A DNA stretch of 64,000 nucleotides from Paragordius varius. Lineage: Eukaryota; Animalia; Nematomorpha. Made by a program: the position numbers and the translations under genes. The notes under the pieces are model-generated. The model had not been told where the DNA came from. It made no database searches and worked only from the letters and a program-made list of their open reading frames with translations. Below, one piece after another: positions 8,576 through 12,906 of the stretch. How positions within the stretch are numbered: position 1 is the stretch's first letter; each line of letters begins with the position of its first letter. The stretch is taken from NCBI GenBank assembly GCA_964247055.1, contig OZ176055.1:1-64000 (forward strand). Direction: 5' to 3'.

Positions 8576-8727
8576 TGGGCCACTCCTGGAGGTACTGCAA
8601 TACCAGGTTGACCCGATGGGGAGGGATAGGCAAGCCCAGAGCGCCTCCCCAAAATCTCCAAAAATAAATTTAATATCATGGACCTCTTTAGAGGTCGTAT
8701 CAGATATTAAGCTGATAAGAACAGATA
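8576..8727 (-). ncRNA. U2: U2 snRNA gene, 3' part (about nt 38-189), interrupted by a retrotransposon
   Basis: Minus strand reads TATCTGTTCTTATCAGCTTAATATCTGATACG-ACCTCTAAAGAGGT (hairpin)-...ATTTTTG (Sm site)-GGGGAGG...CCTCCCC (stem III)-CCTGGTATTGCAGTACCTCCAGG (stem-loop IV). All are canonical U2 elements. Confidence 0.96.
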
Positions 8728-11700
8728 TAATTTATTAATATATATAAAAATACAATTTAGAATATATGAAGAAAAGTGCTGCGCAACAATATTGGGCATG
8801 GGGAAGTTACAAGGGGGAAGAAAGAAAATATTATATATATAAAAAAAAATAAAATAAATATAAAAAGAAATATATATATATAAAATATTACAATGATGCA
8901 TTTGTTGGGTTGTTGTCTATGAGGGAATTTCGACCGCTCATAAACATGTGGTACATATCCGAGGATGCTTTGATAGTATTGGTAACTATTGATTTCTTTA
9001 GTTGGGTAGGGCATCGGAACCTGATCTTCTCAAAAAGAACATCGTTTTTCGAATACCATGAGCCGAGGCTCCCTACAACAACTGGAATGACTTGGGTGTT
9101 GCTGTATGTTTCCTGTAATTGTTGAGCCATACAGCAATATTTCATTATTTTATTGTTAAAGGCCGTTTCGAACGATTCTAGCCTGTTTTCAAACGGCACT
9201 GTGGGATCAATGATATAGCAATCAGTGCCATTTGTTACAATGAGGTCAGGACGTAGTCTCGACGAATCAATGGCTTGATTTTCACTTAGGATCTTGAAAT
9301 TCGATGGGAGGTTGTCTTTAATCAGGTCCACTATGATGTTGTGTCTTTTGGTGATTATATTATCATCTTTGAGGCAGTGGTTTAAAACGTGTGCCTGAGT
9401 TTCTTTTGACTTGCCGCAGCGACGGCACATTTGTTCCGACGACCTGAGTCGCATTTTTGTTGGAAGCAGATTGAGCCGCGCTCGATGGATGAAGTTCCAG
9501 TCTCTGAATCGAAGATCTTTATTATTGTAAAGAAAATGATGACTGACCTTATCATCAGCGACGCACTCCATCACCCGACCCTGCAAAGCAAAATGGTGTA
9601 GCTCAGTATCCTTTAACTTTCGTTTATAAAATCGAAGGTTAGAAACAACAGCTGAGCGATTGTCTTGGGAGATTTTAGAGAACTCTGAAATTACTGTAGG
9701 CTGAAAAGAATCATCAAAAGACCAGGAAATTTTGAGAGATTCAGACGCAATTCTCGCTATTGTCCAAATGTTTTGGCATTTATTAGCTGGATTTGAGACA
9801 AGAGGGTTCTCATAACCAGACAAATACTTGCCTAATTGATCGGGAGTTATTGAATCTAATCGAACCTTAAAACGAAAGCTAGCCGAAACCTTAAGTTCCT
9901 CGAGAGCAGAAACTCTTATAGAAGGATCTAAGCTAGTAAGTAACTTAAAAGCAGAATCCACACGAAATATATTAATGTCATCTCGGAATAGGGGCATCCC
10001 TAAAGCGCCCTTATTACGAGAGCCAAAAATATAATTGTTAGTGGCATCTCTTGGAAGATTTAATATTTGTTTGAACACTTTAGTTAGCTTTTTATCTAGA
10101 TATTCACCTGTAACCATTTTAAGCTCATTATTTCTCAACTGGTGAGAAATAGTGGGATAGAAAAAAGTTTTAATAGCGTCTAGCTTTTGCCAAGGGAGGA
10201 GGCTAGAACTATGAATTTTATCCACAATTTCCGTAGAAGGAACGGGATTAATGAAATTGAGACCTACAGGCTTTCCAAGAAACTTAACAAACTCGCCTTG
10301 ACCAATTGAGGGAACGACAACTTCACCAATCTTAAAAACAGGACTACAAGAAGCAATAGAAATACTATTGCACTTCTCAGCTTTGATCGAAAGACCAATA
10401 TCATGAATAAGACATTCTAACAAATTGAGCCCAACTTGATGACGTTCAGGAGAGTCAGACAATAAAACAATGTCATCAGCATAAGCGAGGACATTGTGAC
10501 CATTAAACACCATAGATCTCAAGACAGAATCGATTGACAAATTAAAAAGAAGGCCAGAAATTGGACACCCCTGTTTAATGCCAGACAAGAAAGGAATGGG
10601 TTGCGTTAACCCAGAGGCGGAAAAGAACTGAGTACATGAATTTGTGTAAATATCCTTAATTAAAGCTTGAATATTATTATCTATACCAAAATTAGGGAGA
10701 CACTCAAAAATCAGCTGGTGAGGGACCGAGTCAAACGCAGCAGTGATATCAATAAAGGTTACAAAAATATCTTTTTTATTATGTTTAGCATCAGAAATTG
10801 ATTTATTTAAAATATAATTATGCTCAAAGCAGCCATCAAAAGGCATAAATCCTTTCTGGGCTGATGATAATAAGTTATTCTTTAAAATATGTTTAGAAAT
10901 ACGGTTGGCAATAAGGCCAGTAAATAATTTATAAATAGTATTGCTTAGAGAAAGGGGCCTCCAGCTTGAAACAAGAGAAGGGTCTCCCTTTTTTTTAGAA
11001 ATTAAGATTGACTTAGTTACTTTCCAATGATTAGGAATCATTCTATGACTTAAACACAAATTAAAAATTTTAGATAAAAGAAAACCTTTGGGATCCACCT
11101 GCTTCCATTTGGTATATGAAATACCATCAGGACCAGGGGAGCTGTTAGAAACTTTTCTTAGTTTATCAGAAACTTCAGATGCTGAAAAGGGAATAAAATC
11201 AAGTAAAGGGACAGAATTATTAGAATAATTAAAATTAATAGGCTCAGATTTTTTGCCAATTGTATTGTTAAAATAATTTGTTATATCTTCGTTATTTATT
11301 TTACAAGAGGATGGAGGGCCATCAACGATTAATCTTATAGCCTTTTTCCTATTTCTCTTATACATGCTACGAATATTTAAATCTTTATGAACCAAACTTT
11401 TAAACTTATTATAATCAGCCCGGGGAGGAGATAGTGCATTTTGAATAGAGCTTATTAAAGAACAAACGTCCTCCCAGTCGGAATTCTCGTCGTGGGAGTC
11501 AAGAAGGTTGTTAAAATTAGTGAAAGGAAAAGTATTTTTATTTAAAGCAGATGATTTATTAAAACTTTTATTTGGTGGAGGTAGAGTAACCGATGAAGTG
11601 GGTTCCTCATCAACACTCTCCTCAAGAATAGTAAAACGATTAGATAAAGAGACTTCATTCTTAGAAAAGTAATTAAAATAATTTTTGTTTACCGAACTAC

Positions 11701-12875
11701 TAGGATTTAGAATATTGGAATTAATATCCGTACTGGAATTATTGCCTTCATGTCCCTTACCAATGATGTTTGAGGTCCCACTCACTTTGGTAGGAGAAGA
11801 ATTAACTGGAGAGCTGGGTGGATCAAAAAAGTTTACTGAATGAGTTGGAGATGACTCGACAACCTTAGGCTTATTAGACGGATTGAAACGGAGGTTTGAC
11901 AAACTTAACGGTTTGCTGTGAGGATGAGGAGGTAGATTATGAGACCTTTTATGAGATAAGAGAGACATGCGCTTGGGAAACGACAAGTCACACTCATCAC
12001 ATGCGTGAGGCATTTGGACAATAGGAGATTTGGACGCAAAAATGCACTCTTTCATATGTATACTTGGGTGAATAGATAAAACTTTGTTACAAGGTTTGCA
12101 AATATTAACTATTTTGATTAGTTCTTTATGGACCAGCTTAATATGACGTAGAAGAGACTGTCTCTGGGCAGTCCAGGATTTACAACGAAATTGATGATTG
12201 CAGGATTCAAACGGACACGAAAAATGATTAGGTAAAGGAAAATAGAAGGATAGGGTTTTGTCCTGCAGGGTAGGTTGATGTGGCATCACCTCCAATAGGT
12301 CGCCATCATTATCATCATCATTATTATTTATCTTAAGCATTTTGTTGGCTGGATGGACAAGATCAAGGATGGTCTTGCGTTTAATGTTTGAGCTGGGAGA
12401 TTTGGCCTGATTGGATGACTGATTGGTAGCTGTGTACACGTTGTCGTAGAATTGAGATGAAGAGAGTGAAGGGAATTGGTGTTCATAGAGAGAGTCAATA
12501 TCGGGTGTTGGAGTTGTCGACGGGTTGACACAGAATGATGGATGGCTTTGAGTATTGACCGTGGTGACAGAGGTATGGCAGAAGGTTGTCTTGCAGTACA
12601 CTGGTTGATTATCATTATCACTTATTGTAAGGGGAAACATGATTTGTACGTTGTTGGAGCTAATAGTGTTGGTTGAAATCATATCTATAATAAAATAAAT
12701 AATGTATAATATTGGAAAGAAATTTAGATGGACCAAAGGATTAAAGAATGGAAATAAATAAAGTCCTAATCACCCGGATAATTAATATAAAACCAAAAGG
12801 GGGCCGGGAATTCAGAGACACACAATTAAGAGTAAAAACAACATGCGAATAAAAGATAAAGAGAGAGGCGCGAAT
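8728..12875 (-). mobile_element. Full-length Utopia-like (NeSL-group) U2-snRNA-targeting non-LTR retrotransposon, 4148 bp
   Basis: Bounded exactly by the two U2 halves. It has a ~190-nt 5'UTR, a single intact ORF and a 160-nt 3'UTR ending AATAAATTA, with no TSD. Confidence 0.92.
8888..12682 (-). CDS. Zinc-finger / reverse transcriptase / restriction-like endonuclease polyprotein (~1264 aa from the first ATG; the ORF track starts at an upstream TTG, 12736)
   Basis: Three N-terminal zinc fingers: CPFESC...HIKLVH, CKPC...HMKEC and CDEC...HKRSH. RT motifs: PGPDG, WRPLSLSNTIYK, QKGF, DITAAFDSVPH, GIKQGCPISGLLFN, YADD, FLG. These are followed by CCHC (CRRC...HVLNHC), RHN and the RLE motif RPDL...IDPTVPFE...KIMKY. 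Confidence 0.97.
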   Translation of the reverse strand: MISTNTISSNNVQIMFPLTISDNDNQPVYCKTTFCHTSVTTVNTQSHPSFCVNPSTTPTPDIDSLYEHQFPSLSSSQFYDNVYTATNQSSNQAKSPSSNIKRKTILDLVHPANKMLKINNNDDDNDGDLLEVMPHQPTLQDKTLSFYFPLPNHFSCPFESCNHQFRCKSWTAQRQSLLRHIKLVHKELIKIVNICKPCNKVLSIHPSIHMKECIFASKSPIVQMPHACDECDLSFPKRMSLLSHKRSHNLPPHPHSKPLSLSNLRFNPSNKPKVVESSPTHSVNFFDPPSSPVNSSPTKVSGTSNIIGKGHEGNNSSTDINSNILNPSSSVNKNYFNYFSKNEVSLSNRFTILEESVDEEPTSSVTLPPPNKSFNKSSALNKNTFPFTNFNNLLDSHDENSDWEDVCSLISSIQNALSPPRADYNKFKSLVHKDLNIRSMYKRNRKKAIRLIVDGPPSSCKINNEDITNYFNNTIGKKSEPINFNYSNNSVPLLDFIPFSASEVSDKLRKVSNSSPGPDGISYTKWKQVDPKGFLLSKIFNLCLSHRMIPNHWKVTKSILISKKKGDPSLVSSWRPLSLSNTIYKLFTGLIANRISKHILKNNLLSSAQKGFMPFDGCFEHNYILNKSISDAKHNKKDIFVTFIDITAAFDSVPHQLIFECLPNFGIDNNIQALIKDIYTNSCTQFFSASGLTQPIPFLSGIKQGCPISGLLFNLSIDSVLRSMVFNGHNVLAYADDIVLLSDSPERHQVGLNLLECLIHDIGLSIKAEKCNSISIASCSPVFKIGEVVVPSIGQGEFVKFLGKPVGLNFINPVPSTEIVDKIHSSSLLPWQKLDAIKTFFYPTISHQLRNNELKMVTGEYLDKKLTKVFKQILNLPRDATNNYIFGSRNKGALGMPLFRDDINIFRVDSAFKLLTSLDPSIRVSALEELKVSASFRFKVRLDSITPDQLGKYLSGYENPLVSNPANKCQNIWTIARIASESLKISWSFDDSFQPTVISEFSKISQDNRSAVVSNLRFYKRKLKDTELHHFALQGRVMECVADDKVSHHFLYNNKDLRFRDWNFIHRARLNLLPTKMRLRSSEQMCRRCGKSKETQAHVLNHCLKDDNIITKRHNIIVDLIKDNLPSNFKILSENQAIDSSRLRPDLIVTNGTDCYIIDPTVPFENRLESFETAFNNKIMKYCCMAQQLQETYSNTQVIPVVVGSLGSWYSKNDVLFEKIRFRCPTQLKKSIVTNTIKASSDMYHMFMSGRNSLIDNNPTNASL

Positions 12876-12906
12876 TTTGATCTTAGCCAAGAGGCCGAGA
12901 AGCGAT
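12876..12906 (-). ncRNA. U2: U2 snRNA gene, 5' part (nt 1-31)
   Basis: Minus strand reads ATCGCTTCTCGGCCTCTTGGCTAAGATCAAA, the canonical U2 5' end with stem-loop I and the U6-pairing region. Confidence 0.96.

What the first reader, a model, noticed from the sequence alone, without database searches (positions are those of the whole stretch)
8576..12906. Intact sequence-specific retrotransposon inserted inside a U2 snRNA gene
The 5' 31 nt and 3' 152 nt of a structurally complete U2 gene (about 189 nt if rejoined with the missing bases) flank a 4148-bp element. The element has an uninterrupted 3-zinc-finger/RT/RLE ORF. U2-gene-specific insertion near the branch-point region is the established hallmark of Utopia (NeSL-related) elements, so the phenomenon is known. 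This copy is full-length, looks active, and sits in a host lineage that may not have a described Utopia family. It is a candidate programmable-site integrase comparable to R2. It is also a parasite of a core spliceosomal gene in a genome with extremely short introns.
Basis: partly seen in the sequence, partly recalled or inferred. Interest (0 to 1): 0.85.

Follow-up and report, generated by a model that had tools for sequence, protein, structure and literature searches.

The report
Utopia retrotransposon splitting a U2 gene
A young, coding-intact jumping gene of the known "Utopia" kind sits at the standard Utopia site inside a U2 splicing-RNA gene 6 kb from a chromosome end. This is a new host and family of a known kind, not a new mechanism.

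Summary
A U2 snRNA gene on the minus strand is split into a 31-nt 5' piece (12876-12906) and a 151/152-nt 3' piece (8575-8725/8727). A 4.15-kb non-LTR retrotransposon in the same orientation lies between them. It has one open 1264-aa ORF: three N-terminal zinc fingers, RT with YADD, a CCHC knuckle and a PD-(D/E)xK restriction-like endonuclease.

The 3' junction (...|TCTGTTCTT, canonical U2 nt 39) is the published Utopia site. Four sibling copies (98.2-99.6% identical ORFs) sit at the same nucleotide in other U2 genes whose flanks are unrelated or only 69-87% identical. At least 25 of about 35 U2 gene bodies are cut at this nucleotide, with eight different element tails.

The nearest foreign relatives share 37-40% identity. 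All four that I checked (springtail, two ticks, turtle) are also followed by U2 starting at TCTGTTCTT.

- This copy lacks 350-415 nt of 5' UTR.
- Older dead copies of the family lie outside U2.

The scan had already reported Utopia elements and a U1-targeting sister family elsewhere in this genome. In my trees the window's family is the closest U2-targeting relative of that U1 family. The host is probably a horsehair worm or a relative, on weak evidence. I obtained no RNA evidence.

The parts
12876..12906 (-). U2 snRNA gene, 5' fragment (nt 1-31). The last three A's are shared with the element's first bases, so the junction is ambiguous by 3 nt.
   Evidence: Identical to nt 1-31 of the uninterrupted U2 genes L001/L002; Rfam partial match.
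12907..12960 (-). U2 upstream region with a conserved A/T-rich block about 24-40 nt before U2 +1. This is the presumed snRNA promoter element that would drive a U2::element co-transcript.
   Evidence: The block is conserved upstream of interrupted and uninterrupted U2 genes while the rest of the flank diverges. Promoter function is inferred.
8726..12875 (-). Utopia-type non-LTR retrotransposon, family 'A' of this genome. It is 4150 nt, or 4148 nt if the terminal TA is counted as U2.
   Evidence: Bounded by the two U2 pieces; four siblings with 98.2-99.6% ORF identity.
12683..12875 (-). 5' UTR, 193 nt, truncated. Siblings have about 545-610 nt containing repeated AAATTCGCGC-type units.
   Evidence: Alignment of the five copies.
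8888..12682 (-). Single ORF, 1264 aa plus stop, uninterrupted.
11939..12217 (-). Three N-terminal zinc fingers: aa 156-185 (C2H2-like with a long spacer), aa 195-213 (CCHC/CCHH-like) and aa 228-248 (classical C2H2). This is the presumed target-DNA-binding module.
   Evidence: Motif scan; Pfam zf-C2H2_6 at 226-248, E 0.011. Fingers 1 and 3 are conserved in tick, springtail and spider relatives and in the U1-targeting sister family.
10274..10996 (-). Reverse transcriptase domain (aa 563-803), with YADD at 10472-10483.
   Evidence: Pfam RVT_1, E 6.8e-38; R2 protein structures, E 1e-64 over aa 496-927.
9374..9427 (-). C-terminal CCHC zinc knuckle (aa 1086-1103).
   Evidence: Motif; aligned to the same knuckle of R2Tg.
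8933..9373 (-). Restriction-like endonuclease, PD-(D/E)xK type (RPD at aa 1144-1146, IIDPT at aa 1157-1161, downstream K).
   Evidence: phmmer against R2Tg/R2 chains, E 4e-17, aligned across the RLE with the catalytic motifs matched; weak Pfam L_protein_N hit, which is a PD-(D/E)xK fold.
8726..8887 (-). 3' UTR, 162 nt, ending in AATAAA (8731-8736) five nt before the junction.
   Evidence: A terminal AATAAA occurs in 7 of 8 tail types here, in the U1 family, and in 5 of 5 foreign junctions.
8575..8725 (-). U2 snRNA gene, 3' fragment from canonical nt 39 (TCTGTTCTT...) to the 3' end. It is 151/151 identical to the intact U2.
1..2237 (.). Terminal (CCCTAA)n telomere tract. The U2::element unit lies 6.3 kb inside it.
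7133..8545 (.). About 1.4-kb unit on the 3' side of the U2 gene. It is shared at 69-79% identity with other U2 loci, interrupted or not, on other chromosomes.
   Evidence: BLAST of the flank against loci L001, L007, L012, L014, L052 and L054.

Best explanation
This is a young copy of a U2-gene-specific, restriction-like-endonuclease (RLE) non-LTR retrotransposon of the Utopia group (NeSL clade). It is a new family in a host phylum not on the published host list, probably Nematomorpha or a relative.

Shown here:
- One ORF encodes three zinc fingers, RT, a CCHC knuckle and an RLE.
- The element lies in the same orientation as U2, and its 3' end abuts canonical U2 nt 39.
- Five young copies occupy that nucleotide in different U2 genes.
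- Seven further element tail types (eight in all) use the same nucleotide.

Inferred mechanism:
1. The U2 promoter (Pol II, capped) transcribes through the 31-35-nt U2 leader into the element.
2. The AAUAAA at the element's extreme 3' end directs cleavage about 10 nt into the downstream U2 body. The RNA therefore ends in a short U2 tag.
3. The ORF protein binds this RNA and recognises U2 DNA through its N-terminal fingers.
4. The RLE nicks the bottom strand between nt 38 and 39, and reverse transcription is primed from the nick (TPRT as in R2), helped by pairing of the U2 tag with the target.
5. Second-strand cleavage a few nt upstream leaves a 2-4-nt target deletion. In this copy, joining at an AAA microhomology produced a 5' truncation and a 6-nt gap.
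For: Domains.

Junction: the 3' junction is identical in all five copies, while the window copy's 5' junction differs from its siblings'. The published Utopia 3' flank starts at U2 nt 39.

Independent insertions:
- ORFs are 98.2-99.6% identical, but flanks outside U2 are unrelated or 69-87% identical.
- The closest sibling sits in a U2 variant only 131/151 identical to the canonical gene.

Selection: synonymous codon differences outnumber non-synonymous ones about 2-3 to 1 between copies.

Genome-wide: 25 of 25 inspected interrupted U2 bodies start at TCTGTTCTT, with eight tail types, and only 5 U2 genes are uninterrupted.

Relatives:
- Best hits are arthropod and turtle proteins at 37-40% identity and 500-611 bits, against 222 bits for R2.
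- All four checked relatives are U2-embedded at the same nucleotide.
- Trees place the family among them.

Co-transcription and U2 tag:
- Dead ectopic copies carry U2 nt 6-35 at the 5' end (L046, L058) and 9-10 nt of U2 at the 3' end (L041, L055).
- An ectopic U1-family copy carries 10 nt of U1.
- The terminal AATAAA is conserved across lineages and phyla.
- No ribozyme was found at the 5' end.
Against: - Transcription, the mapped RNA ends and current activity are therefore all inferred.
- The copy lacks 350-415 nt of 5' UTR, which may or may not matter.
- Older family members lie outside U2, one with a 13-bp target-site duplication, so specificity is strong but not absolute.
- The trees are unrooted quick searches without Repbase Utopia, NeSL, R2 or R4 references.
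- The own-genome sequences have a deviant amino-acid composition that could inflate their monophyly.
- The ectopic copies with U2 pieces trace back to only one or two ancestral events that were later duplicated.
- Host assignment rests on a single gene.
Confidence: 0.9

Rival explanations
1. One ancient, accidental insertion into a U2 gene was later copied around the genome by segmental duplication or gene conversion of U2 units. No site-specific retrotransposition was involved.
For: U2 loci share a roughly 1.4-kb downstream unit and promoter-proximal blocks. Two siblings on C5 lie 56 kb apart in inverted orientation with 87% identical flanks. Interrupted U2 3' halves are often 100% identical to the intact gene, as concerted evolution would also produce.
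Against: Elements are 98-99.6% identical while flanks are 69-87% identical or unrelated. The window copy has a different 5' junction. The closest sibling sits in a U2 variant only 131/151 identical to the canonical gene. The excess of synonymous differences implies selection through retrotransposition. Eight tail types, including families only 35-38% identical in protein, use the same nucleotide, as do relatives in ticks, a springtail and a turtle.
Confidence: 0.04
2. The element is an R2, R4 or NeSL-type element, or an unclassified RLE lineage, that converged on U2. It is not a member of the Utopia lineage.
For: No curated Utopia, NeSL, R2 or R4 sequences could be brought into the tree. Public annotations call the relatives 'R2' or 'R2DM'. 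Keno shows that convergence on this very site has happened before.
Against: R2 proteins score 120-222 bits against 500-611 bits for the U2-embedded relatives. Those relatives include species listed as Utopia hosts in the paper: Ixodes scapularis, Acyrthosiphon pisum and Pelodiscus sinensis. No Myb, APE or Ulp1 protease domain was detected. The 'R2' names are automatic annotations.
Confidence: 0.05
3. The copy is a dead relic: an intact-looking ORF by chance, with no current activity of the family.
For: The 5' UTR is truncated. One sibling has a premature TGA. There is no expression evidence.
Against: A 3.8-kb ORF free of stops in a 27% GC genome, with all catalytic motifs intact. Four of five copies are open. 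The adjoining U2 half is 151/151 identical to the intact gene. The closest sibling is 99.6% identical.
Confidence: 0.15

Closest known systems
Utopia (Kojima & Jurka 2015, PMC4640811), U2-gene-specific RLE non-LTR retrotransposons of the NeSL clade
   Same: Single ORF with 1-3 N-terminal zinc fingers, RT, a C-terminal zinc finger and an RLE. The 3' flank starts at U2 nt 39. Several lineages coexist in U2 genes. Disrupted U2 genes outnumber intact ones. Some families have ectopic copies.
   Different: New family, only 37-40% identical to the nearest foreign proteins. The host is probably a nematomorph, a phylum not in the paper's host table. It has no RNase H (present in oomycete families) and no protease (present in the Trichinella family). 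The target shows a 2-4-nt deletion, against none or one nt in the arthropod relatives checked. Its sister lineage in the same genome targets U1.
R2 (28S rDNA-specific RLE element; solved TPRT complexes 8GH6, 9DOU, 9NL2-4)
   Same: Homologous RT, CCHC knuckle and RLE (E 1e-64 and 4e-17). Lives inside a multicopy RNA gene in the gene's orientation and depends on host-gene transcription. TPRT primed at a bottom-strand nick is inferred by homology.
   Different: The target is a Pol II snRNA gene rather than Pol I rDNA. No Myb motif was detected and no 5' ribozyme was found. The conserved terminal AATAAA suggests polyadenylation inside the target, unlike R2.
Keno (Tx1-clade, APE-type U2-specific element)
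   Same: Same 3' flanking U2 sequence (stated in the paper).
   Different: [quoted passage not shown] This element has an RLE and no APE domain.
NeSL-1 (spliced-leader-exon-specific, nematodes)
   Same: Same broad clade according to the paper, and the same ZF-RT-RLE order.
   Different: NeSL-1 targets SL1 exons and carries an N-terminal Ulp1-like protease. Neither applies here.

Membership tests
Utopia | Single ORF: N-terminal zinc finger(s), RT, C-terminal zinc finger and PD-(D/E)xK restriction-like endonuclease | tested here: met
Utopia | 3' end abuts U2 at canonical nt 39 (...|TCTGTTCTT), in the same orientation as U2 | tested here: met
   definition.
Utopia | Recurrent independent insertion into U2 genes (site specificity) | tested here: met
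   All 5 young copies are in U2 genes with diverged or unrelated flanks. Older copies are partly ectopic, as the paper allows for some families.
Utopia | RT groups with Utopia families rather than R2, R4, HERO, CRE or other NeSL-clade lineages | tested here: inconclusive
   The nearest relatives are U2-embedded elements from published Utopia host species, and the trees nest the family among them. No curated reference or outgroup sequences were available, so the trees are unrooted.
R2 | Insertion at the R2 site of 28S rDNA | tested here: not met
   Both flanks are U2.
R2 | N-terminal zinc finger plus Myb DNA-binding motifs | tested here: not met
   Zinc fingers are present, but neither Pfam nor the PDB search found a Myb motif in aa 1-490. 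A divergent Myb cannot be excluded.
Keno | APE-type endonuclease N-terminal to the RT | tested here: not met
   No Exo_endo_phos hit; the endonuclease is a C-terminal RLE.
NeSL-1 | Insertion in spliced-leader exons; Ulp1-like protease domain | tested here: not met
   The target is U2 and there is no protease hit.

The most novel reading that the evidence does not exclude
This family and the U1-snRNA-targeting family in the same genome are sister lineages (44-49% identical, same three-finger architecture) inside a clade whose other members all target U2. If so, a natural U2-to-U1 retargeting happened within this host lineage, and comparing the two proteins would locate the determinants of target choice.

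In addition, Utopia-type elements would use the host snRNA promoter together with a terminal AAUAAA, so that their RNA ends in a roughly 10-nt target-derived tag that guides priming. The Utopia paper does not describe this arrangement.
Probability: 0.5. Interest if true: 0.6.

Novelty: new member of a known kind. Interest (0 to 1): 0.4.

Why it matters
It extends Utopia to a further animal phylum and shows an extreme case. At least eight element tail types share one nucleotide of U2, and only two canonical plus three variant U2 genes remain uninterrupted. The dead ectopic copies also give a concrete, testable picture of how the element is expressed and primed: a U2-promoter co-transcript, a terminal poly(A) signal and a short U2 tag. 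Together with its U1-targeting sister family, it offers a natural pair for studying how RLE retrotransposons choose and change their DNA target. That question matters to people who engineer R2-type elements for site-specific insertion. The phenomenon itself, U2 targeting at this site, is already published.

Tried and rejected
I did not try another route, so no read or RNA evidence was obtained and read laying was not used.
- The look-up of encoding contigs has no record of the window's own protein.
- Rfam at permissive E-values found no HDV-like or other ribozyme in the full-length siblings' 5' regions. I therefore dropped an R2-style self-cleaving 5' end.
- PDB chain ids cannot be used as sequences, and no R2, R4 or NeSL reference could be brought in.
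The U1 loci, the 5' junctions of families B-D, and the remaining five interrupted U2 bodies were not inspected.
- The first 52-row tree search (site-heterogeneous mixture model, the default) did not finish in time. I reran it with the plain LG+G4 model.
- The 'careful' search on a 23-row subset also did not finish. Its quick LG+C20 PMSF tree gave the same topology.
- Segmental duplication as the sole source of the copies was considered and rejected.
- Literature searches found no U1-specific non-LTR retrotransposon, only the U1-specific DNA transposon Dada. Repbase reports are not in the library.
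Full report
**What is in the sequence**

Rfam finds one family above threshold in the 64-kb window. It is U2 on the minus strand at 8570-8760 (122.9 bits). The alignment shows that only model positions from about 37 onward are real U2; the first 36 are forced onto A/T-rich sequence. A second, sub-threshold match at 12827-12906 contains a perfect U2 5' end.

I compared both pieces with the genome's own uninterrupted U2 genes (L001, L002). 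The 5' piece is nt 1-31 (12876-12906). The 3' piece starts at TATCTGTTCTT (8727), or at TCTGTTCTT (8725) if the TA belongs to the element, and is 151/151 identical to the intact gene.

A 4148-4150-nt insert in the same orientation lies between them. It has one open frame of 1264 aa from its first ATG (8888-12682). The window begins with 2.2 kb of (CCCTAA)n, so the unit lies 6.3 kb from a chromosome end.

**What the ORF encodes**

- Pfam finds RVT_1 at aa 563-803 (E 7e-38) and a C2H2 finger at aa 226-248.
- Motif inspection gives three N-terminal fingers (aa 156-185, 195-213, 228-248), YADD at aa 734, a CCHC knuckle at aa 1086-1103, and RPD...IID...K motifs.
- Against solved structures, the RT matches R2 proteins (E 1e-64 for avian-type R2, 6.5e-34 for R2Bm).
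- The last 265 aa align across the CCHC knuckle and restriction-like endonuclease of R2Tg (E 4e-17), with the catalytic motifs in register.
- No APE, Myb, RNase H or protease domain was detected.

**Is it site-specific?**

The whole genome is 110.6 Mb in 44 contigs. It holds four sibling copies with ORFs 98.2-99.6% identical to this one; three are open and one has a single TGA. Each sibling lies between a U2 5' piece and a U2 3' piece, and all five share the identical 3' junction.

The siblings carry U2 nt 1-35 at their 5' side. They also have 350-415 nt more 5' UTR, built of repeated AAATTCGCGC-type units. The window copy starts inside the last such unit, at an AAA shared with U2. It is therefore a 5'-truncated insertion with complete coding capacity, not a full-length one.

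Several results point to independent insertions rather than duplication of one filled unit:
- Outside U2, the flanks of the five loci are unrelated or only 69-87% identical.
- The closest sibling (15 differences in 3795 nt) sits in a U2 variant that is only 131/151 identical to the canonical gene.
- Differences between copies are mainly synonymous, 10:5 to 43:22 codons. That pattern is expected if the lineages diverged while still selected for function.

Genome-wide, RF00004 gives 46 matches, of which 35 pass the gathering score. Only five are uninterrupted:
- two identical canonical genes;
- two divergent ones in a C2 cluster;
- one on C4 whose branch-point-pairing and target sequence is altered.

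All 25 interrupted bodies that I could inspect begin at TCTGTTCTT. They are preceded by eight different element tails. Four of these correspond to protein families that I could translate (A, B, C, D). Families B-D are 35-38% identical to the window's protein.

**Specificity is not absolute**

Older family-A copies (88-96% nt identity, many stops) lie outside U2 on C1, C7, C10 and C11.
- One has a 13-bp target-site duplication.
- Two related copies begin with U2 nt 6-35 next to non-U2 DNA.
- Two other related copies end with 9-10 nt of U2 followed by non-U2 DNA.

**Comparison with known elements**

Kojima & Jurka (PMC4640811) define Utopia as RLE non-LTR elements with one to three N-terminal fingers, RT, and a C-terminal finger plus RLE. 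The 3' flank is U2 from nt 39. Several lineages coexist in U2 arrays, disrupted U2 genes outnumber intact ones, and specificity varies between families. Every one of these features is met here.

The nearest proteins in the 5.8-billion-sequence collection share 37-40% identity (500-611 bits). They come from spiders, ticks, a springtail, aphids, crayfish, ants, a nematode and a turtle, including species on the paper's host list. I fetched the DNA around four of them: Orchesella dallaii, Ixodes scapularis, Ornithodoros turicata and Pelodiscus sinensis. All four are followed by U2 beginning at TCTGTTCTT, and three also have a U2 5' piece upstream.

I built two trees from these proteins and the genome's own families. 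One has 52 rows under LG+G4. The other has 23 rows under LG+C20 PMSF. Both were quick searches with SH-aLRT support. Both place all own-genome lineages in one clade (99) nested among the arthropod elements. The trees are unrooted and lack curated Utopia, NeSL, R2 and R4 references. The own-genome rows have a deviant composition. I therefore rate the phylogenetic criterion as supportive but not conclusive.

**How it probably works**

Shown: the anatomy, the junctions and the recurrence.

Inferred by homology to R2: the RLE nicks the bottom strand at nt 38/39, and reverse transcription is primed from the nick.

Inferred from this genome's dead copies:
- The template RNA starts at the U2 start site, because ectopic copies carry U2 nt 6-35.
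- The template RNA ends about 10 nt inside the downstream U2 body, because ectopic copies carry 9-10 nt of U2 and one U1-family copy carries 10 nt of U1.

This fits a feature I found conserved. An AATAAA lies 0-9 nt before the 3' junction in seven of eight tail types here, in the U1 family, and in all five foreign junctions. A cleavage site 10-30 nt downstream of that signal would fall in the first nucleotides of U2. The Utopia paper mentions neither polyadenylation nor promoters.

No ribozyme was found at the 5' end. This is consistent with a capped Pol II co-transcript that needs no processing.

**Host**

Earlier notes of this scan call the host an AT-rich animal with 22-27-nt introns, and one suggests a horsehair worm. 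My only test was the 592-aa GT92 ORF in the window. Its best named hit is Gordionus sp. at 33% identity and 311 bits, far above the next named hit (Mytilus, 116 bits). This supports a nematomorph or relative, but weakly. Nematomorpha is not in the paper's host table.

**What the scan already knew**

The scan has already reported Utopia-type elements in U2 genes elsewhere in this genome. One follow-up concluded 'new host and family, not a new mechanism'. The scan also reported a U1-targeting family. I came on the U1 family independently. L039 carries an intact 1280-aa ORF between U1 nt 1 to about 20 and the U1 body from CCAATCGTG. Four U1 genes are intact and about 13 are weaker or partial.

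- The window's family is the sister of that U1 family (SH-aLRT 100 in both trees; 44-49% identity against 35-38% to the other U2 families).
- The finger architecture is the same, and identity is lowest in the N-terminal third.
- Parsimony on the tree needs a single change of target.

**Verdict**

The finding is real and correctly interpreted, apart from 'full-length' and the implied strictness of targeting. It is a new family and probably a new host phylum of a published kind. Its extra value lies in three things: the depth of U2 colonisation, the clues to expression and priming, and its kinship to a U1-targeting lineage.

Noticed in passing
L039:1040-5307 (G000 C6, about 3.725-3.729 Mb); also C6:565-633 kb: A sister RLE family (44-49% aa identity, intact 1280-aa ORF) is inserted in U1 snRNA genes between about nt 20 and the CCAATCGTG body. 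Four U1 genes score as intact and about 13 as weaker or partial. Two further copies lie outside U1, one carrying 10 nt of U1. The scan has already reported this (s1-266884, s1-313169, s1-257454).
   Followed up: partly
L005 (G000 C4:2626169-2626361): An uninterrupted U2 variant (153 bits) reads GTAGAACTCG instead of GTAGTATCTG at the branch-point-pairing and Utopia target sequence. It is only 109/151 identical downstream. It could be a pseudogene or a variant that escapes the element.
   Followed up: no
window 7133-8545, with L001, L007, L012, L014, L052, L054: A roughly 1.4-kb unit on the 3' side of U2 is shared (69-79% identity) between U2 loci on several chromosomes. Three of these lie about 7-8.5 kb from contig starts in the same orientation (C4, C6, C8) and are hit by three different Utopia families. 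U2 genes appear to be a recurrent subtelomeric feature.
   Followed up: partly
L036 and L053 3' flanks (G000 C7 about 4.865 Mb; C1 about 11.509 Mb): Two independent ectopic family-A insertions have 3' flanks that both begin with CAATCAAA-like sequence. This resembles the GATCAAA that lies just upstream of the U2 target. It may be a remnant of target recognition or chance.
   Followed up: no
window 3742-6622, versus L040: Stretches of the subtelomeric region between the telomere and U2 are 88-94% identical to the flanks of a U1-family copy on C8. This indicates another dispersed repeat.
   Followed up: no
window 1-20: The telomere tract starts with a non-repeat CTAGGGGGATCC-like string before (CCCTAA)n. 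It is possibly an assembly or adapter remnant.
   Followed up: no
L003, L004 (G000 C2:11.95-11.99 Mb): A cluster holds a divergent U2 type (125/151 identical, altered 5' region). It contains both uninterrupted and Utopia-interrupted members and at least two element families.
   Followed up: no
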